DNA of 64,000 bases from assembly GCF_006345805.1 (NCBI RefSeq), contig NW_021833083.1, forward strand, positions 1-64,000. The letters run 5' to 3'. Below the pieces are notes generated by a model that saw nothing but the letters and a program-made list of their open reading frames with translations, did no database searches and was not told where the DNA came from. This DNA comes from Octopus sinensis. Lineage: Eukaryota. Of the stretch, positions 12,495 to 50,076 are shown in pieces. Position 1 is the stretch's first letter. Every line of letters begins with the position of its first letter. A program made the translations under genes and the position numbers.

Positions 12495-12905
12495 TCTTTC
12501 TCTTTCTCTTTTTCTTGTTTTAGTCATTTGATAGCGGCCATGCTAGAGCACCGCCTAGAAGGGTTTTAGTCGAATAAATCGACACCAGCACTCTTTAAAA
12601 ACATAGTACTTATTCTATCGGGATCTTATGCCGAACTGTTAAGTTACAGGGACATAAACATACCAAAAACGGTTGTCAAGTGCTGGTGGGGATACAAATA
12701 CAGATACACAAAGACACATACACACACACGCACACATGTAACACACACACGTATGGATTGGCTTCTTTCAATTTCCGTCTACCATATCCAATCACAAGGC
12801 TTTGGTCGGTCAGGGTTGTAGTAGAAGACACTTGCCCAAGGTGTCATGCAGCGGAACTGAATACGGAAACGTGTGTTTGGGAAGTAAGCTTCTTACTACA
12901 CTGAT
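12495..12905 (-). mobile_element. SINE family B, diverged full-length copy
   Basis: Both modules are present: AGACACTTGCCCAAGG (reverse complement of the CORE-like box) and GCGGCCATGCTAGAGCACCGCC. Confidence 0.85.
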
Positions 12906-12920
12906 GCCTGTGTTTATAAG

Positions 12921-13019
12921 AAATATGGAACGCTTCACGAATATGCGTGTCATCCTTGAGAAACGGCTATGCTAATCTTCTCTGTATCATTGCAATTTTA
13001 TTATATGTATTGCCGAAGC
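12921..13019 (-). pseudogene. U6: U6 snRNA pseudogene
   Basis: Minus strand reads GCTTCGGCAATACATATAATAAAATTGCAATGATACAGAGAAGATTAGCATAGCCGTTTCTCAAGGATGACACGCATATTCGTGAAGCGTTCCATATTT. That is about 11 substitutions in 99 nt versus U6 as I recall it. The ACAGAGA box is intact, the ISL is mutated, and the first ~6 nt are missing. Confidence 0.93.
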
Positions 13020-13119
13020 CTGTGTGCTGATGATATTTTTACTTATTTATTGGTATATCTGTTGCCGAAGCAATAGATATACTAATAAATAAGTGAAAAT
13101 ATCATCAGCACACAGGCTT
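13016..13119. repeat. 50-bp-arm fold-back (hairpin) with a 4-nt loop
   Basis: Arms at 13016-13065 and 13070-13119, loop CGAA. There are 47/50 Watson-Crick pairs, and the other three are G-U on the plus strand. Confidence 0.95.
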
Positions 13120-13327
13120 GCTACAGAACTGTAATACAACACTGTGTTGTTTCCATAAAAATGTAACATAGCAATAATTTATTTTGAGAATCGAGACCAC
13201 TGTTTGAATAATTTATAAACATTGAAAAAGTGACTGAAGAGGCGGCGAAAAGTTTTTCGGAAAAGAAAGACCGTAGAGAAACAAGTGAGGTGTTGATAGT
13301 TTTAGTAATATGGCTCTTGTAAATCGA

Positions 13328-13700
13328 TGAGCTGGCAGAAACGTTAGCACGCCGGGCGAAATGTGTAGCCGTATTTCGTCTGTCGTTACGTCCTGAGTTC
13401 AAATACCGTCGAGGTCGACTCTGCCTTTCATCCTTTCGGGGTCGATTAAATAAGTACCAGTTACGCATTGGGGTCGATATAATCGACTTAATCCGTTTGT
13501 CTGTCTCCTCTGTGTTTAGCCCCTTGTGGGTAGTAAAGAAATAGGTATTTCGTCTGCCGCTACGTTCAAATACCACCGAGGTCGACTTTGCCTTTCATCC
13601 TTTCGGGGTCGATTAAATAAGTACCAGTTACGTACTGGGGTCGATATAATCAACTTAATCCGTTTCTCTGTCCTTGTTTGTCCCCTCTATGTTTAGCCCC
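13328..13700 (+). mobile_element. SINE family A head-to-tail dimer (tail-1)
   Basis: A full unit runs to ...TAAAGAAATA (13543). A second unit restarts at GGTATTTCGTC (13544) and ends AATAAAGAAATA (13700). Confidence 0.92.
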
Positions 13701-14229
13701 TTGTGGGCAATAAAGAAATAAGAATCGTTAGTACGATCGTTAGCAGAATCATTAATTGTTACCACCTCCCCGAACTTGCCAAAATTTGAAACCAATAATA
13801 TGGCTCTTCAAGGCATCGAACAGGTAAATTCGTTTAGCACGCCAAGTAAAATGCTTAGTGAAATTTCGTACATTTCTACGTTCTAAGTTCGAATTCTGCC
13901 GAGGTCGACTTTATCTTTCATTTTTCCGGGGTCGATATAATAAGATGCAGTTGTGTACAGGGGTTGATGTAATAAATTAAACTTCCTCCTCTGAACGTGC
14001 TGGGCTTGTGCCAAAATTTAAAATCAATAATGTATCGCTTTCGAACTGAAAGAAACTTAGTCTTAGTCAAACAGAAAGTTATATCATATTGTGTGTGTAT
14101 GCGCGTGTGTGAATTTGTATGTTTGTTTGTGTTTGAGTATATATAATTATACAGACGTATGTTTATATATTAAATATGTTTATATAAATGCTTGTAACTA
14201 CATTCGTATGCCTTCATGTTGTCTTACTC

Positions 14230-14687
14230 TTTTTAATTTAGAATAAATTTTGACCGACCACCTGCTTGGTAGCAAGGCTGTGAAGGAAAGTTATCTTCCT
14301 TTGTTCAGCCTTTAAATCTTAAGAAGATTTTGCAGATTTTTATAATTCCAGATATCGCGATCATTTGTACTGCATTAAGGATTTGTGTTCTTATACCCCA
14401 CGCCAATCGAAACACAAGTTCTGCTATACTTTGCTCCAGATGGGTTGGCGCGTATCCTTTTGCTTCAATAATAATAGGTATGAAGTTGAAAGTGTTTCTT
14501 GTGTACTGAATCTGCAAACTCCTTATCAATGGTCCATAGGTGTCCCTTTGTATTTTTCTAACCGTATTGGTGTCCAGAGGGCAGCGAATTTCTACATCTT
14601 TTCCATGCGGACCCACAAAACAATATCTGGTCGACTGGATTTTAATTTGATAGCTGTTTTAAGTATTAAGTTTCACGAATATTCTTT

Positions 14688-16579: not shown

Positions 16580-17322
16580 CTCAACGATTCTATGTGGTGA
16601 AAAGATGAGAAAACAGCAACATTCCCACAAAAAGCCTTCTTGGCAAGAGCGTATTCAACACCAAATTAAGCTTCTTAGGTCTGACAGAGAATGTTTGAAA
16701 AACCTTGAGTTTGACAAGACTACCAAACCTACAAAAACCCGAAAATTAAAGAAAAAATATAATATGAAAACCATACTTGACATTGATACCACCGTAGAAA
16801 CGATCAAGCAAAAGTTATGTGCTAAAGCTGCACGCATAGCGTGGTATGAAAAGCGTGTTAGATTCTTCAAGGACAACATGTTAAAAAATAAGCCCAAAAA
16901 TTTTTACAGGAAGATAGGGAAAACACCAGTTACTGTAAAATCTGTCCCATCAAAAGAAGTGCAGGGATTTTGGAATAAAATTTAGGCAGAAGTAAAACAC
17001 ACAACTAAAAGGACCCTTGGATTGATAGAATATCTACAGACTTGGACTCCTTAGAGGGGCAAAAGTGGGAGGGTGTCAAGGTAGAATATATAAGATCTGC
17101 TCTCAGGAGGTCAAGCACGTGGAAATCTCCAGGAAAAGATAAAATTCCTAACTTCTGGTTGAATACCTTCCCAGAGAGACATGAACTGCTAACAAAACTT
17201 TACAACGATGGTTTGCAACACCCTAGTATGATGCCCTCTTGGCTAGTTAATGGTTTAACATTCCTGCTTCCAAAAAGTGAAGAAACAAATGAACCAAAAA
17301 ATTATAGACCCATAACCTGGGT
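16579..17322 (+). mobile_element. R4/Dong-like pre-RT and RT N-terminal relic (pseudogene)
   Basis: KKPSWQERI...ETIKQKLCAKAARI...KPKNFYRKI...FW and WKSPGKDKIPNFWL...WLVNGLTFLLPKS....KNYRPIT (RT domains 0/1), with a stop and frameshifts. Confidence 0.88.
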
Positions 17323-17410
17323 GCATCAAACCAAATGTTTAGCGGCATTTCTTCCAACTATACGTATGTATTCAAATCGAGACCAATTTTCCTTTAATAA
17401 ATTCAGAGTC

Positions 17411-17810
17411 GCAGGAGTGGCTGTGTGGTAAGTAGCTTGCTTACCAACCACATGGTTCCGGATTCACTCCCACTGCGTGGCACCTTGGGCAAGTGTCTTC
17501 TACTATAGCCTAGGGCTATAGTGGATTTGGTAGACGGAAACTGAAAGAAGCCCGTCGTATATATGTATATGTATATATATGTATGTGTGTGTTTGTGTGT
17601 CTGTGTTTGTCTCCCCCCCAACATCGCTTGACAACCGATGCTGGGGTGTTTATGTCCCTGTAACTTAGCAGTTCGGCAAAAGAGACCGATAGAATAAGTA
17701 CCAGGCTTACAAAGAATAAGTCCTGGGGTCGATTTGCTCGACTAAAGGTGGTGCTCCAGCATGACAGCAGTCAAATGACTGAAACAAGTAAAAGAGTAAA
17801 AGAGTAAAGA
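17411..17810 (+). mobile_element. SINE family B (tRNA head, CORE-like box, internal microsatellite), full length
   Basis: A box TGGCTGTGTGG, B-box-like GGATTCACTCC, CACCTTGGGCAAGTGTCTTCT, and (AAAGAGT)n tail. TSD AGAGTCG at 17405-17411 and 17810-17816. Confidence 0.92.
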
Positions 17811-21089: not shown

Positions 21090-21262
21090 AGGCGTAGGAG
21101 TGGCTGTGTGGTAAGTAGCTTGCTTACGAACCACATGGTTCCGGGTTCAGTCCCACTGCGTGGCACCTTGGGCAAGTGTCTTCTACTATAACCTCGAGCC
21201 GACCAAAGCCCTGTGAGTGGATTTGGTAGACGGAAACTGAAAGAAGCCCGTCGTATATATGC

Positions 21263-21344
<82 letters not shown>

Positions 21345-21560
21345 ATATGTTTGTTCTGTGTTTGTCCCCCTAGCATTGCTTGACAACCGATGCTGGTGTG
21401 TTTACGTCCCTGTCACTTAGCGGTTCGGCAAAACAGACCGATACAATAAGTACTAGGCTTACAAAGAATAAATCCTGGGGTCGATTTGCTCGACTAAAGG
21501 CGGGGATCCAGCATGGCCTCAGTCAAATAACTGAAACAAGTAAAGGAGTAAAAAGAGAGA
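21090..21560 (+). mobile_element. SINE family B, full length
   Basis: GGCGTAGGAGTGGCTGTGTGG...GGTTCAGTCCC...; internal (TA)n ~21255-21345; 3' module to AAACAAGTAAAGGAGTAAAA. Confidence 0.93.
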
Positions 21561-24765: not shown

Positions 24766-24988
24766 TTTACTCTCTCTTTTACTCTTTTACTTGTTTCAGT
24801 AATTTGACTGCGGCCATGCTGGAGCAACGCCTTTAGTCGAGCAAATCGACACCAGGACTTATTCTTTGTAAGCCTAGTACTTATTCTATCGGTCTCTTTT
24901 GCCGAACCGCTAAGTTACGGGGACGTAAACACACCAGCATCGGTTGTCAAGCGATGTTGGGGGTACAAACACAGACACACAAACACAA

Positions 24989-25047
<59 letters not shown>

Positions 25048-25213
25048 GACATATATACGACGGGCTTCTTTTCAGTTTCCGTCTACTAAATCCACTAACA
25101 AGGCTTTGGTCAGCCCGAGTTGAAGACACTTGCCTAAGGTGCCACGCAGTGGGACTGAACCGGGAACCATGTGGCTGGTAAGCAAGCTACTTACCACACA
25201 GCCACTCCTGCGC

Positions 25214-25214
<1 letters not shown>
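24766..25214 (-). mobile_element. SINE family B, full length
   Basis: Reverse complement of the 17411-17810 pattern, including CCACACAGCCACTCCTGCGC at 25195-25213. Confidence 0.93.
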
Positions 25215-25244
<30 letters not shown>

Positions 25245-40568: not shown

Positions 40569-42044
40569 AAAAAAAAAAAAATAACCGTTGTAGAAAGTAG
40601 AAAATATTATGTTTTAAAAAAAATTTCTTCTATGTAATATAATTGTTTCTAAATTAAGCCCAAGGGCAATAATTTTGAACTGGAAAAAATAAGTCGATTA
40701 CATCGGCCCCAGTACAGGATTGAGTACATCGTGATTAGGTGAATGCAGTGGACGTTTGTTTGACTTGAACTTTCGTGGTTCGGCAAGATAAACGTGTGCA
40801 GTGGCCTGGCGGGCATAAATAAAAAGAATTATAGTTTTCGTGGAAAAGAATTAGAGCAAGTGGATTGATATGTAGAAGAGAAACTAGTGCCTCGTACGTT
40901 ACAAGGATGGGATGCTTTATAACAGGAGCGGATATATAATGATTATAATAGTTGTAGAAGGAACGCAGAGAAGAAACAATACTTCTGTTGGCAAGTGGTT
41001 GTTGCTATTAACCACAGGTCAGCTGAGAACTGGTTAGACCTATGTTTGATAACGTTCCATTCGTGACTAATCCATCGAATATTTTATTTTCTAACCTTGA
41101 AAAGTAAGCCTGCTATTTGTGATGCAGTGTCAATGATAATTCGTATGTATGCTTTCGTGTTAGGAACGGACGAGAGAAATCGTTTTGGTGCTTATGTTAG
41201 AAATCACAATTTTTATTGGGAATGTATATGCATTTAAGTTTATTGAGGAAATTATTGGATCGCGAATGCTTTTATAAAACGATGAATGAATGAATGTCTC
41301 AACATACGATCCCTCATTCCACATAAATCTGAGGCATAATGCCTCTCATAGGAATCACTCTTTATATTTTCACATTTTGTCATTTACAGCTATATTCTCA
41401 CATTATTTTTTCTTCCGTGTTTTTTTTTTGTATCTGTCATTCATACTCTTACTGTTCGTTTTTGTTGTTGGGTAGGGGGGACAAGAAAAGAAAAGGGGAA
41501 TCCGGCTGTTGTCATTTAAAAAAAATTTCTGTCCATCTTTTTTTTTTTTAACCGACATTTTCTGCTTCTTTTTATACTTCCTTAATCCTTTCCCAGTTTT
41601 TCTATATTTTTCTTCTCTTCTGATATTTTATCGTCCTTTGAATCCTTTGAAAACGTTTACTGATATGGATATTTTCAGTATAGACAAACTGCTCCACCCC
41701 CTATTCTTCTTCCTTCTTTTTTCTTCATTTCCTTATCTTATTTATTTATTTATTTTTTTTTACTCGCATCTTTCTGTTCTGTTCAATCATATTTGTTTAT
41801 GTATCTCCACATCCTTCCATTTTTCAAAAAACTTACACCTCATATTCTACAGTTTCTATTCCCTTCAGCTTCATACACTCCTTTCTCATCAATTTCTCAC
41901 ATTTCTCTCTTTATTTTTCATACACATTTTTTTTTTCAATATTTCTGAAAACACATTCTATTTGTTTTACTTCTTTCTTTCCTCCCTTTTTGCACAGATT
42001 TCCATTTTATTCACTCTGTTCATTTCTTGTTTTTCTTTTCTTCC

Positions 42045-42077
<33 letters not shown>

Positions 42078-43552
42078 ATTTCAAAAAAAAAAAAATAACC
42101 GTTGTAGAAAGTAGAAAATATTATGTTTTAAAAAAAATTTCTTCTATGTAATATAATTGTTTCTAAATTAAGCCCAAGGGCAATAATTTTGAACTGGAAA
42201 AAATAAGTCGATTACATCGGCCCCAGTACAGGATTGAGTACATCGTGATTAGGTGAATGCAGTGGACGTTTGTTTGACTTGAACTTTCGTGGTTCGGCAA
42301 GATAAACGTGTGCAGTGGCCTGGCGGGCATAAATAAAAAGAATTATAGTTTTCGTGGAAAAGAATTAGAGCAAGTGGATTGATATGTAGAAGAGAAACTA
42401 GTGCCTCGTACGTTACAAGGATGGGATGCTTTATAACAGGAGCGGATATATAATGATTATAATAGTTGTAGAAGGAACGCAGAGAAGAAACAATACTTCT
42501 GTTGGCAAGTGGTTGTTGCTATTAACCACAGGTCAGCTGAGAACTGGTTAGACCTATGTTTGATAACGTTCCATTCGTGACTAATCCATCGAATATTTTA
42601 TTTTCTAACCTTGAAAAGTAAGCCTGCTATTTGTGATGCAGTGTCAATGATAATTCGTATGTATGCTTTCGTGTTAGGAACGGACGAGAGAAATCGTTTT
42701 GGTGCTTATGTTAGAAATCACAATTTTTATTGGGAATGTATATGCATTTAAGTTTATTGAGGAAATTATTGGATCGCGAATGCTTTTATAAAACGATGAA
42801 TGAATGAATGTCTCAACATACGATCCCTCATTCCACATAAATCTGAGGCATAATGCCTCTCATAGGAATCACTCTTTATATTTTCACATTTTGTCATTAC
42901 AGCTATATTCTCACATTATTTTTTCTTCCGTGTTTTTTTTTTGTATCTGTCATTCATACTCTTACTGTTCGTTTTTGTTGTTGGGTAGGGGGGACAAGAA
43001 AAGAAAAGGGGAATCCGGCTGTTGTCATTTAAAAAAAATTTCTGTCCATCTTTTTTTTTTTTAACCGACATTTTCTGCTTCTTTTTATACTTCCTTAATC
43101 CTTTCCCAGTTTTTCTATATTTTTCTTCTCTTCTGATATTTTATCGTCCTTTGAATCCTTTGAAAACGTTTACTGATATGGATATTTTCAGTATAGACAA
43201 ACTGCTCCACCCCCTATTCTTCTTCCTTCTTTTTTCTTCATTTCCTTATCTTATTTATTTATTTTTTTTTACTCGCATCTTTCTGTTCTGTTCAATCATA
43301 TTTGTTTATGTATCTCCACATCCTTCCATTTTTCAAAAAACTTACACCTCATATTCTACAGTTTCTATTCCCTTCAGCTTCATACACTCCTTTCTCATCA
43401 ATTTCTCACATTTCTCTCTTTATTTTTCATACACATTTTTTTTTTCAATATTTCTGAAAACACATTCTATTTGTTTTACTTCTTTCTTTCCTCCCTTTTT
43501 GCACAGATTTCCATTTTATTCACTCTGTTCATTTCTTGTTTTTCTTTTCTCC

Positions 43553-43585
<33 letters not shown>

Positions 43586-43603
43586 ATTTCAAAAAAAAAA
43601 AAA
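40569..43603. repeat. Tandem duplication of a ~1.51-kb unit, two copies
   Basis: Copy 1 at 40569-42082 and copy 2 at 42083-43590, delimited by three A13 runs (40569, 42083, 43591). The differences I saw are only small indels in homopolymers or simple repeats. Confidence 0.97.
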
Positions 43604-44304
43604 TTATTTTTTGCTGTTGTTTTATAATCTGTTATTTCATTGCCAACTTACCGTCACCTAAATTCTACTTTATTAAAGTACTCGATCTATCTCTGTATTC
43701 ATCTCCGTTAGTCAACGTATTATTGCTTCTTTTCATTCTCCAACTTCTCATTTCTGACTTTCGCTACTGTTTCTTCCTCAACACTTTCCGATTCTTTCCT
43801 CTTTCCTTCCTGTTATGATATTGTGTCATATTCGTAAATTTTCGTTGATTTTCCTCCTATTTCATCAGGTTCCTCCTGTCATCATTTTGGTGTCCTCTTC
43901 CCTGATTGTGCATCCTTTTCCAGAACTCTTTATCATATATACAATTGCTTGTGATTTGCACATTTTCCTCATATTTTCTCGACTGTACCTTTCTTACCCT
44001 GTCTTTCTCTCCTTTTCTTCCTTCTTTTTCTTTATATTTGAGCCTATATACATATATACTCTTACATATATATATATGAGCTCAAAATGAATGCATATAG
44101 TTTTCATTTAATATGAGCATAGATTGCCATCAATCTGCATTTACGTATATTCATATATATATATATATATATATAGATATATATATATATATATGCAACA
44201 TATATAACATATATAAATATAATACACATACATGTACATACATAAACATATACAGACGCACACACACGTATGTAGATACACACACATACTCTCTCATGTA
44301 CATA

Positions 44305-48415: not shown

Positions 48416-48497
<82 letters not shown>

Positions 48498-48533
48498 ATA
48501 TATATATATATATTATATATATATATGTATATA

Positions 48534-48575
<42 letters not shown>

Positions 48576-48597
48576 AATATATATATATATATGTATA

Positions 48598-48639
<42 letters not shown>

Positions 48640-48860: not shown

Positions 48861-50076
48861 CAGGGGTTGGACAAAATAATGGAAACACTTAGCATCATAG
48901 CATCATAATTTATGTATCTATAAAACCATCAAAAGCTTGTTTATTTTATATTTTTTATTTATTATTAGTGTTGCTTAATATGTTTTGCTAAAATTGCTGT
49001 TTATCTTAAGATATTATCAGAAAAAAGGTAATTAACATTCATTAAAATGACAGATCTATCGGACTTTCAAAGAGACCAAATTGTTGGTGCTCGTATCGCA
49101 GGCGCTAGAGTAACGAAAACAACCGAAATGTTTGGTGTATCAAGAAGTACTGTCTGGAAAGTAATAACAGTTTTGAGAAAGAGGAAAAAACCTCCTCGTC
49201 GAAATAAAACTCCGGAAGAAAACCAAAACTTTCAGAAAGGAACCGTTGGACTCTTATGCGAATTGTTAAAAAGGATCATAAAAGTACAGTTCCAAAAATT
49301 ATTGCAGAGCTTAATGACAACCTCGAGAACCCAGTTTCCACAAAAACTGTTCGCTAGGAGCTGCACAAGGCCGGATTTCATGGGAGGGCTGCAATCAGAA
49401 AATCATTATTTTCAAAAAGAAACGTCGCAAAGCGTTTAGAGTGGATGGTCCCAAGAGCAGAGGAAGAATATTATTTTCTCGGACGAGTCATTCTTTACCT
49501 TATTTCCGACCACTGGCCGAATATATGTGTGGAGCCAAAAGAAGCATTTGACCCAGACTGCCTTCTTCCAACTGTTAAACATATATCTTGGAAATCCGCC
49601 GGTCCAATGGTTTCCCTTCATGGCAGAATTAATAGTCAAGACTATTTCAGCAGATCATCTGATCAAATTCATGCTATGGTTGCGGAACAGTTTCTGGAGG
49701 GAAATGCAATCTTTCAGGATGATAATACACCAATTCTCACAGCTAAAGTTGTTTCTGAATGGCACGAGGAACATTCTAGAGAAATTGAAGATCCTATCTG
49801 GCTACCACAGTCCTCAGATCTCAATATCATTGACCATTTATGGTGCATTTTAGAAAAAACAAGTAAGGAGTCGATATCCTCCACCATCATCACTACAAGA
49901 ACTGGAGACTGTTTTAGCTGAAGAATGGACAAAAATTCCTTTGGAAACAATTCAAACTTTGTACGAGTCCATACCTCGTAGAATTCAAGCTGTAATTACT
50001 GCCAAAGGTGGTCTTGTCCCATAGAATAAATTTGTTTGAATTTTTAAGGTGTTTCCATTACTTTGTCCAACCTCTG
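48861..50076 (+). mobile_element. Full-length Tc1-superfamily transposon (1216 bp), DD36E-spaced, inactive
   Basis: 30-bp TIRs CAG(G/A)GGTTGGACAAA(A/G)TAATGGAAACAC and a TA TSD (48859-60, 50077-78). Transposase 49047-~50024 is broken by frameshifts: MTDLSDFQRDQIVGAR...DE...FQDDNTP...DLNIIDHLW...ESIPRRIQAVITAKGG. Confidence 0.96.

What the first reader, a model, noticed from the sequence alone, without database searches (positions are those of the whole stretch)
12906..13119. U6 pseudogene fused to a 50-bp fold-back whose apex is a second U6 5' stem-loop
Seen: on the minus strand the hairpin apex reads TTGC-TTCG-GCAA followed by CAGATATACCAATAAAT, which resembles U6 nt ~5-33 (GCTTCGGCAGCACATATACTAAAATT). 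GCTTCGGCAA recurs 52 nt later as the start of the near-complete U6 copy. All three non-Watson-Crick positions in the stem (13040/13095, 13052/13083, 13061/13074) are G-U on the plus strand, antisense to U6, so that RNA would be a continuous 50-bp duplex. Inference: either a template-switch or fold-back product made during U6 retroposition or repair, or one member of a U6-containing repeat family (U6-headed SINE or MITE-like). If transcribed, it could be a Dicer or ADAR substrate. Three of three wobble-compatible changes is also easily chance, since these are transitions.
Basis: partly seen in the sequence, partly recalled or inferred. Interest (0 to 1): 0.7.

Follow-up and report, generated by a model that had tools for sequence, protein, structure and literature searches.

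The report
Decayed U6 copy with fold-back hairpin
A dead copy of the U6 splicing RNA gene in an octopus genome has had 52 bases of its own upstream flank copied backwards into its 5' stem-loop, most likely by a DNA copying error, making a 50-bp hairpin; it is a neat but ordinary mutational scar with no sign of function.

Summary
A U6 match (RF00026, 82.8 bits) lies at 12919-13027 on the minus strand. A 50-nt inverted repeat (13016-13065 / 13070-13119, 47/50 paired, loop TTCG) overlaps its 5' end. GCTTCGGCAA occurs twice, 52 nt apart. The three mismatches are G·U on the plus strand. The inner 16 nt of each arm are U6 nt 13-28 in register; the outer ~29-34 nt are not U6-like.

The U6 is a pseudogene: five substitutions in the invariant GGCCCCUGCGC stretch, an unpaired 5' stem and a broken T-tract. 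A full-length tRNA-type octopus SINE starts 2-3 nt after the T-tract in the same orientation. This suggests a U6-SINE template-switch retrocopy, but no target-site duplication was found.

A single intrastrand template switch reproduces the 261-nt sequence except for the three arm mismatches: fold back on TATTGC/GCAATA, copy the flank, return at GCTT. The arms differ by 6%, against about 11% for the U6 body and about 20% for the SINE, so the hairpin is probably a later DNA-level event.

The hairpin is unique in 140 kb of octopus DNA. Genome-wide copy number, expression and the pre-event allele could not be tested. The G·U strand bias is compatible with chance (p about 0.25). Low interest.

The parts
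12918..13019 (-). U6 snRNA pseudogene body: U6 nt ~7-107, from GCTTCGGCAATAC to the broken T-tract TTTCTT. Rfam places the match at 12919-13027.
   Evidence: RF00026 82.8 bits, E 1.6e-19. ACAGAGA and AGC are intact. There are five substitutions in GGCCCCUGCGC, further changes elsewhere, and TTTCTT in place of T5.
13016..13065 (-). Right arm (R) of the palindrome. In the favoured model it is the inserted reverse-complement copy of the left arm.
   Evidence: Inverted repeat I1. 47/50 complementary to 13070-13119.
13066..13069 (-). Apical loop TTCG, which is the U6 5' stem-loop tetraloop.
13070..13119 (-). Left arm (L). 13070-13075 (TATTGC) acts as the 5' strand of the U6 5' stem. 13070-13085 is antisense to U6 nt 13-28. 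13086-13119 is non-U6 flank.
13050..13065 (-). Inner right arm: a sense copy of U6 nt 13-28 (GCAACAGATATACCAA).
   Evidence: In-register match to animal U6, 13/16. The 12-mer test gives 1.25e-4.
13060..13071 (-). Direct repeat copy 1, GCTTCGGCAA(C/T)A. Its partner is at 13008-13019.
   Evidence: exact 10-mers 52 nt apart; family D3.
13008..13019 (-). Direct repeat copy 2, GCTTCGGCAATA. The first four bases (GCTT) are the proposed return microhomology.
12493..12915 (-). Full-length tRNA-type octopus SINE in the same orientation as U6. It starts 2-3 nt after the U6 T-tract and is a possible partner in a U6-SINE chimeric retrocopy.
   Evidence: blastn finds 8 copies in the window, with alignments starting at 12901 and ending at 12493-12500. 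The 5' and 3' end alignments show the head AAACACAGGC matching the subfamily AGGTGCAGGC. The family is shared with O. bimaculoides L001 at up to 97% identity.

Best explanation
The locus is a non-functional, decayed retrocopy of U6 snRNA in an octopus genome. Its 3' T-tract abuts the 5' end of a full-length tRNA-type SINE, so U6 was probably captured when a LINE reverse transcriptase switched from the end of the SINE RNA onto U6 RNA (inferred).

The hairpin is a secondary mutational product seeded by the U6 5' stem-loop.

Step 1 (inferred): a short fold-back at the stem-loop placed an antisense copy of U6 nt 13-28 directly upstream of the loop. This could have been self-priming of the cDNA at retroposition, or a small replication template switch. 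It lengthened the native ~6-7-bp stem to ~16 bp.

Step 2 (shown to be sufficient, not shown to have happened): during later DNA synthesis the nascent strand copied through ...TATTGC-TTCG-GCAATA and folded back on its own TATTGC. It then copied the upstream flank backwards for 44 nt, out to AAGCC. Finally it re-annealed through the 4-nt microhomology GCTT to the U6 loop on the original template and carried on.

The net result is a 52-nt insertion inside the U6 5' stem-loop, a 50-bp palindrome centred on the TTCG loop, and a 12-nt direct repeat GCTTCGGCAATA. Three transitions have accumulated since.

Nothing indicates that the hairpin does anything. If an overlapping transcript exists, the hairpin would be a long dsRNA.
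For: - U6 identity and decay are shown.
- The palindrome is statistically extreme and unique in the window.
- The inner arms are U6 nt 13-28 in register. The outer arms are not U6. This rules out a simple tandem U6 duplication.
- A 209-nt precursor plus one fold-back and return reproduces the actual 261 nt, with differences only at 13061, 13052 and 13040, the three known arm mismatches. The two junctions have 6-nt and 4-nt microhomologies.
- The model explains four features: the palindrome centre is the U6 tetraloop; its outer edge falls at TT|CG of the second GCTTCGG; complementarity stops abruptly there (C/C and G/G at the next positions); and Rfam flags non-pairs in the present 5' stem.
- Relative ages: arms 3/50 pairwise, U6 body 10/88 from animal U6 (plus my own knowledge of the animal sequence), SINE 20% from its consensus. 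If the arms were as old as the U6, about 11 differences would be expected. P(3 or fewer) is about 0.005 by my Poisson calculation.
- The SINE is full length and starts 2-3 nt after the U6 T-tract. From the window's density of this SINE's heads (7 per 128 kb of strand), a same-strand head within 6 nt of a given point has p about 3e-4.
- Template-switch mutations that create perfect hairpins, including combinations of inverted and direct repeats, are documented (PMC10710096). U6 chimeras with L1, L2/Mon-1 SINE and RTE through template switching are documented (PMC4476161).
Against: - No pre-event allele or orthologous locus could be examined, so the direction of copying (L to R or R to L) is inferred from parsimony and microhomology only.
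- The simulation matches partly by construction, because R is the reverse complement of L.
- Step 1 is needed as a separate event, so the history takes at least two events.
- No target-site duplication was found for U6+SINE, for the SINE alone, or for hairpin+U6+SINE. The chimera is therefore unproven, and the SINE may have inserted independently next to the T-rich U6 end.
- Low arm divergence could reflect gene conversion between the arms rather than youth.
Some 'substitutions', such as A16 and T17 in the stem, may be native.
- The U6-like heptamer CAGCACA in the outer arm is unexplained.
Confidence: 0.6

Rival explanations
1. Same kind of event in the opposite direction. The precursor was [U6 nt 1-28]-[~26-nt filler]-[U6 nt 7-107]-SINE. 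It could have been a multi-jump reverse-transcription product or an older partial duplication. The left arm was then made later as a reverse-complement copy of the right arm by an inter- or intrastrand template switch that returned at TATTGC.
For: The inner right arm is genuinely U6-derived and in register with GCTTCGG, as expected if it is an original partial U6 copy. The outer arm contains CAGCACA, identical to U6 nt 14-20 (seen directly). Tripartite chimeras from double template jumps are known (PMC2104539, listed).
Against: It needs an extra, more contrived precursor. The remainder of the 52-nt unit shows no similarity to U6 nt 31-56. There is no microhomology at the outer switch point (C/C, G/G). 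It gives no reason why the palindrome edge should fall exactly at TT|CG.
Confidence: 0.17
2. The hairpin plus U6, with or without the SINE, is one old member of a dispersed repeat family in octopus: a snRNA-headed SINE ('SINE/U') or a MITE-like fold-back element. On this reading it is not a locus-specific mutation.
For: A curated O. vulgaris repeat annotation lists one 'U' SINE family (369 kb) and one 'U-L1' family (PMC13282606), so snRNA-related repeats exist in the genus. U6 sits directly on a SINE head. The 140 kb examined is too little to see a family of a few hundred copies.
Against: There is no other copy of the hairpin, of U6 or of the junction in the window or in 76 kb of O. bimaculoides. 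No TSD or terminal repeats flank the palindrome. U6 uses an upstream promoter and the SINE's internal promoter lies downstream of U6, so a U6 head would not be carried into new transcripts (established pol III biology). The described SINEU heads are U1/U2 and were found only in crocodilians (PMC4494074).
Confidence: 0.15
3. A selected structured RNA gene, such as a hairpin-RNA/endo-siRNA or miRNA-like precursor or a dedicated ADAR substrate. On this reading the G·U-only mismatches reflect selection to keep the plus-strand RNA fully paired.
For: The plus-strand RNA is an uninterrupted 50-bp duplex. Several miRNA covariance models give sub-threshold matches. Template-switch hairpins can evolve into miRNA genes (PMC10710096).
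Against: All Rfam miRNA hits are far below their gathering scores (for example 49 against 139.7) and only reflect a generic long stem. A 50-bp stem with a 4-nt loop is unlike the ~35-bp stem and loop of 10 nt or more preferred for miRNA processing (PMC10710096). Three of three transitions on one strand has p = 0.25. There are no conservation or expression data.
Confidence: 0.05
4. Assembly or library artefact, for example a chimeric fold-back read.
For: Fold-back chimeras occur in amplification-based and long-read libraries (general knowledge). No reads were available to check.
Against: The arms differ at three positions, all transitions, as expected of real divergence rather than a fresh artefact. 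The structure returns to the normal template after only 50 nt with microhomology at both junctions, unlike read-level fold-backs, which run to the end of the molecule.
Confidence: 0.03

Closest known systems
Template-switch mutations (TSMs) that create perfect hairpins in one step (Löytynoja and co-workers; PMC10710096, PMC8794818). This is the same process as quasi-palindrome correction by intrastrand switching.
   Same: A near-perfect inverted repeat arises next to its source. It is explained by a brief fold-back of the nascent strand and a return to the original template. The product combines an inverted and a direct repeat, and point mutations accumulate afterwards.
   Different: The event here is a net 52-nt insertion seeded by the stem-loop of an snRNA pseudogene. 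It is longer than, for example, the 28-base human event described in that paper (which also reports one of up to 83 bases). No phylogenetic before/after pair is available to prove it.
U6 chimeric retrocopies made by LINE reverse-transcriptase template switching: U6/L1, U6/L2 and U6/Mon-1 SINE in platypus, U6/RTE in opossum (PMC4476161).
   Same: A U6 copy is joined through its 3' T-tract to the 5' end of a retroelement in the same orientation. The U6 has no recognisable upstream promoter in the inferred precursor.
   Different: The host is a mollusc, and the partner is a full-length tRNA-type SINE rather than a 5'-truncated LINE. No TSD could be found, so membership is unproven. U6/Alu-type chimeras are reported to be rare.
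SINEU, SINEs with snRNA-derived heads (PMC4494074)
   Same: An snRNA-derived sequence lies at the 5' end of a SINE body. The snRNA is proposed to have been added by template switching.
   Different: SINEU heads are U1/U2 and the families are multi-copy with master genes. Here the snRNA is U6, only a single copy has been seen so far, and there is no way for the SINE's internal promoter to transcribe the U6 part.
Functional U6 snRNA genes (RF00026)
   Same: The match covers the full model length and has intact ACAGAGA and AGC motifs.
   Different: The 5' stem is unpaired in its present arrangement. There are five changes in the invariant U4-pairing/ISL stretch, the terminator is broken, and no TATA-like element lies at -30 in the inferred precursor.

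Membership tests
U6 spliceosomal snRNA (RF00026), as sequence homologue | Covariance-model score above the gathering threshold over the full model | tested here: met
   82.8 bits against 44, model positions 1-105
Functional U6 gene | Base-paired 5' stem-loop | tested here: not met
   cmscan marks 3 of 5 stem pairs as non-standard in the present arrangement. Pairing is restored only if 13020-13071 is removed.
Functional U6 gene | Invariant ACAGAGA box and AGC triad | tested here: met
   GATACAGAGAAGATTAGCAT is an exact match at 12969-12988
Functional U6 gene | Conserved GGCCCCUGCGCAAGG region (U4 pairing and internal stem-loop) | tested here: not met
   The locus reads AGCCGTTTCTCAAGG: five substitutions at Rfam upper-case positions, with no compensating change in the 3' strand
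Functional U6 gene | Pol III terminator of 4 or more T | tested here: not met
   TTTCTT at 12923-12918
Functional U6 gene | Upstream PSE and TATA box at about -30 | tested here: inconclusive
   The inferred precursor has CTGATGAT at -31..-24. The present arrangement has GATATACC there by accident of the insertion (read). No cephalopod PSE consensus was available.
U6 template-switch chimeric retrocopy | U6 3' T-tract joined head-to-tail to a retroelement in the same orientation | tested here: met
   The SINE head starts at ~12915, 2-3 nt after TTTCTT
U6 template-switch chimeric retrocopy | Target-site duplication flanking the whole chimera | tested here: not met
   No 9/9, 10/11, 11/13 or 12/15 match between 12905-13170 and 12430-12512, and none expected by chance either. 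Elements this old (11-20% diverged) may have lost it.
U6 template-switch chimeric retrocopy | Both parts arrived at the same time (absent together from an outgroup) | not testable with these tools
   No orthologous octopus locus could be fetched
Template-switch mutation hairpin | Sequence explained by one switch-and-return on a nearby template | tested here: met
   Simulation from a 209-nt precursor gives the actual 261 nt with only the 3 arm mismatches, using 6-nt and 4-nt microhomologies
Template-switch mutation hairpin | Ancestral state without the inverted copy seen in related sequences | not testable with these tools
   No route to other octopus assemblies by DNA
miRNA precursor | Match to a curated family, or miRNA-like geometry (~35-bp stem, loop of 10 nt or more) | tested here: not met
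   Best score is 49 bits against a gathering score of 139.7. The hairpin has a 50-bp stem and a 4-nt loop.
MITE or dispersed fold-back repeat, or snRNA-headed SINE family | Multiple dispersed copies with shared boundaries | tested here: inconclusive
   No second copy in the 64-kb window or in 76 kb of O. bimaculoides. The sample is far too small for a low-copy family.
MITE | TSD directly flanking the terminal inverted repeats | tested here: not met
   The flanks read ...GTAGC | palindrome | CGGCAA..., with no direct repeat

The most novel reading that the evidence does not exclude
Two linked possibilities remain. First, the locus may record LINE reverse-transcriptase template switching onto U6 in a cephalopod; the survey read here traces such chimeras from birds to mammals. 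Second, the U6 5' stem-loop may act as a recurrent seed for fold-back synthesis, so that U6 retrocopies are a repeatable source of long perfect hairpins. In a lineage with very heavy A-to-I editing and many lineage-specific small RNAs, such hairpins would supply raw dsRNA substrates.
Probability: 0.12. Interest if true: 0.5.

Novelty: new member of a known kind. Interest (0 to 1): 0.25.

Why it matters
If the reconstruction is right, this is a clean single-locus example of two things. A native RNA stem-loop, once copied into DNA, becomes a hotspot for template-switch mutation. One such event can then produce a 50-bp perfect hairpin, the proposed raw material for new small-RNA genes. It would also hint that U6 capture by retroelement reverse transcriptases operates in molluscs. 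Neither point changes current understanding. The locus itself looks like neutral debris.

Tried and rejected
**Searches for the same or related loci**
1. Exact-product look-ups of five window ORFs next to or across the hairpin, to fetch the same locus from other assemblies: none is on record.
2. Homology search with the 151-aa ORF that ends at the hairpin: one hit, a SINE-derived O. bimaculoides protein. This showed that the protein collection holds no ORF-level calls of octopus DNA, so I ran no further searches of that kind. Its locus, L001 (76 kb), carries the same SINE family but no U6 and no hairpin copy.
3. Metagenome scan for a 21-mer of the arm: 0 matches.

**Sequence tests**
4. Simple 52-nt tandem duplication of U6: rejected. 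Beyond the first ~26 nt the two units are unrelated.
5. Pure chance complementarity between the flank and U6: rejected for the inner 16 nt.
6. TSD search at every plausible boundary: nothing found.
7. tRNA scan to type the SINE head: no call.
8. Tandem repeat scan of 12000-14500: nothing found.
9. Rfam at permissive thresholds: only generic long-hairpin miRNA models far below their cut-offs.
10. Search for a host-gene exon in the window, to fetch an orthologous gene range: no convincing coding frame, so I dropped this route.

**Mechanism considered and rejected**
11. Reverse-transcriptase snap-back as the origin of the whole 50-bp palindrome: rejected. The outer arms are not U6, GCTTCGG occurs twice, and the arms are younger than the U6 body.

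**Literature**
12. No paper on octopus U6 genes or pseudogenes was found.

Full report
**What is there**

On the minus strand the region reads as follows: unique flank; left arm L (13119-13070); loop TTCG (13069-13066); right arm R (13065-13016); then CGGCAATACATATAATAAAATTG... running on as U6 to ...CCATATTTCTT (12918); then a SINE.

- Rfam's U6 model matches 12919-13027 (-) at 82.8 bits (gathering score 44), over the full model.
- The arms are 50 nt, 47/50 complementary, with a 4-nt loop.
- GCTTCGGCAA occurs exactly twice, 52 nt apart.
- The three mismatches are C·A or A·C on the minus strand and so G·U on the plus strand.
- The plus-strand RNA folds to an unbroken 50-bp stem (-77.6 kcal/mol, z -19). 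The minus-strand RNA folds to -65.7 kcal/mol (z -16).
- Every other long hairpin in the window is a TA-type microsatellite. This is the only one with complex arms.

**Organism and setting**

The window is AT-rich and full of simple repeats and SINEs. The one protein homologue found for a neighbouring ORF is from Octopus bimaculoides. The 76-kb O. bimaculoides locus fetched through it carries the same SINE family at up to 97% identity. The window is therefore octopus, or a close relative.

**The U6 is a pseudogene**

ACAGAGA and AGC are intact. Against that:

- The stretch that is GGCCCCUGCGC in Rfam's invariant positions reads AGCCGTTTCTC.
- There are further changes at UUGG, AACG and CGCAAAU.
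- The terminator reads TTTCTT.
- cmscan flags three of the five 5'-stem pairs as non-standard.
- Against the animal U6 sequence as I know it, the body differs at about 10 of 88 positions.

**How much of the arms is U6**

Reading from the apex, the arm consensus is GCTTCG-GCAATAGATATACTAA.... Positions corresponding to U6 nt 17-28 match the animal sequence 10/12 in register, and only 1.25e-4 of all 12-mers in the window match as well. The arm keeps the canonical C25 that the U6 body has lost. Beyond about nt 28 there is no significant similarity: the second half of the 52-nt unit against U6 nt 33-58 is no better than shuffles. So the inner 16 nt of each arm are U6 nt 13-28, sense in R and antisense in L. 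The outer ~29-34 nt are something else. This rules out a plain tandem duplication of U6.

**A SINE sits on the U6 3' end**

blastn of the region against the window finds eight copies of one SINE, and five alignments begin at 12901. Aligning the 5' ends with their flanks gives the family start ...AGG(C/T)GCAGG.... It also shows that the local copy, AAACACAGGC, is full length and starts at ~12915. That is 2-3 nt after the U6 T-tract, in the same orientation. The 3' end, (TAAAAGAG)n-like, lies at ~12493.

From the density of this family's heads in the window, a same-strand head within 6 nt of a given point has p about 3e-4 (my calculation). This is the architecture of U6 chimeric retrocopies made by LINE reverse transcriptase jumping from the 5' end of one RNA to the 3' end of U6. 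Such chimeras are described for L1, for L2 and Mon-1 SINE in platypus, and for RTE in opossum (PMC4476161). However, I found no target-site duplication for any choice of boundaries. The chimera therefore remains an inference, and independent insertion of the SINE next to the T-rich U6 end is possible.

**How the hairpin most likely arose**

Delete 52 nt (13071-13020). The sequence becomes flank-...TTAGTATATCTATTGC-TTCG-GCAATACATATAATAA...: a U6 whose 5' stem TATTGC/GCAATA is paired and extended by TATAT/ATATA and TTA/TAA.

From this 209-nt precursor one intrastrand template switch suffices:
- copy through GCAATA;
- fold back on TATTGC;
- copy the flank backwards out to AAGCC, which gives ...CAGGCTT;
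- re-anneal through GCTT to the U6 loop on the template and continue with CGGCAATAC....

The simulated product equals the real 261 nt except at 13061, 13052 and 13040, the three arm mismatches. Part of this agreement is by construction. The model nevertheless accounts for features that otherwise need coincidence: the palindrome centre is the U6 tetraloop; the outer edge falls at TT|CG of the second GCTTCGG; complementarity stops dead at that point; a 12-nt direct repeat GCTTCGGCAATA results; and the present 5' stem is unpaired.

The precursor itself needs an earlier, shorter fold-back that put antisense U6 nt 13-28 upstream of the loop. Self-priming of the U6 cDNA on its own stem-loop at retroposition, or a small replication switch, would do this. 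That step is inferred only.

Template-switch mutations that make perfect stems in one step, and that can yield combined inverted and direct repeats, are documented (PMC10710096).

**Timing**

The arms differ at 3/50. The U6 body is about 11% from canonical, and the SINE about 20% from its family consensus, although it belongs to an older subfamily. If the arms dated from the retroposition, about 11 differences would be expected, and P(3 or fewer) is about 0.005. The long palindrome is therefore probably a later DNA-level event. Arm-to-arm gene conversion could mimic this.

**Rivals**

1. The mirror-image history, in which R is original and L the copy. It needs a more contrived precursor, U6(1-28)-filler-U6(7-107), and has no microhomology at the outer junction. 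I cannot exclude it, and the U6-like heptamer CAGCACA in the outer arm would fit it.
2. A repeat family. There is no second copy in 140 kb and no TSD. A recent O. vulgaris annotation does list one 'SINE/U' and one 'U-L1' family without saying which snRNA is involved (PMC13282606), so a low-copy family is not excluded.
3. A selected hairpin RNA. The Rfam miRNA hits are generic and far below threshold, the geometry is wrong for a miRNA, and three of three G·U on one strand has p = 0.25.
4. An assembly artefact. This is unlikely given the three transition differences and the microhomology-mediated return.

**What could not be done**

The tools give no DNA-level access to octopus assemblies or reads. 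Exact look-ups of five ORFs, one homology search and one metagenome scan led nowhere. Copy number, the orthologous pre-event state, read support and expression remain open. These are the decisive tests.

**Verdict**

It is best read as a decayed U6 retrocopy, possibly a U6-SINE chimera, whose own 5' stem-loop seeded a template-switch insertion that built a 50-bp hairpin. It is a new example of known processes, with no evidence of function. Interest is low to moderate.

Noticed in passing
window 12493-12915 (-); other copies near 17407-17810, 21090-21560, 24766-25215, 27050-27468, 39750-39892, 57814-57976, 59092-59508, 12047-12169: One tRNA-type SINE family occurs about once per 8 kb. It has young copies (3-8% from consensus) and old ones (12-20%). 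It is shared with O. bimaculoides L001 at up to 97% identity. ARAGORN does not recognise the head as a tRNA.
   Followed up: partly
window 13371-13600: Two tandem copies (spacing 167-174 nt, 90-92% identical) of a different SINE-like unit (...GGGGTCGATTAAATAAGTACCAGTTAC...) lie just upstream of the unique flank of the hairpin.
   Followed up: no
window 41509-42078 and 43022-43627 (+): Two ORFs of 189 and 201 aa share an identical first ~80 residues, which points to a ~1.5-kb local duplication.
   Followed up: no
window 49047-49921 (+): Relic of a Tc1/mariner-type transposase split over two frames. HTH_23 and DDE_3 matches fall below Pfam's cut-offs.
   Followed up: partly
window 17042-17431 (+): An ORF contains KNYRPIT, a motif typical of LINE reverse transcriptases (my own knowledge). 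Pfam found nothing. The ORF's last ~25 nt overlap a SINE copy that starts at 17407 and runs to ~17810.
   Followed up: no
window 21422, 24899, 27347, 40777, 42291, 57946, 59218: GGTTCGGCAA, one mismatch from the U6 loop motif, occurs seven times. At least five of the seven sites fall inside copies of the abundant SINE, and this explains the excess of near-matches to GCTTCGGCAA. It is unrelated to U6.
   Followed up: partly
window 13023-13029 (minus strand) and its mirror at 13106-13112: The outer arm contains CAGCACA, identical to animal U6 nt 14-20, within TCATCAGCACACAG (10/14 to U6 nt 10-23). It could be chance, or a trace of a third U6 fragment.
   Followed up: partly
window 61251-61509, 48438-48639, 1173-1494, 33440-33529: Long (45-124 nt arms), self-complementary TA-rich microsatellites form the window's other 'hairpins'.
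   Followed up: partly
literature: PMC13282606, supplementary table 1: The O. vulgaris repeat annotation lists a single 'SINE/U' family (369 kb) and a 'U-L1' family (53 kb). Which snRNA they derive from is not stated. It would be worth checking them against this locus.
   Followed up: partly
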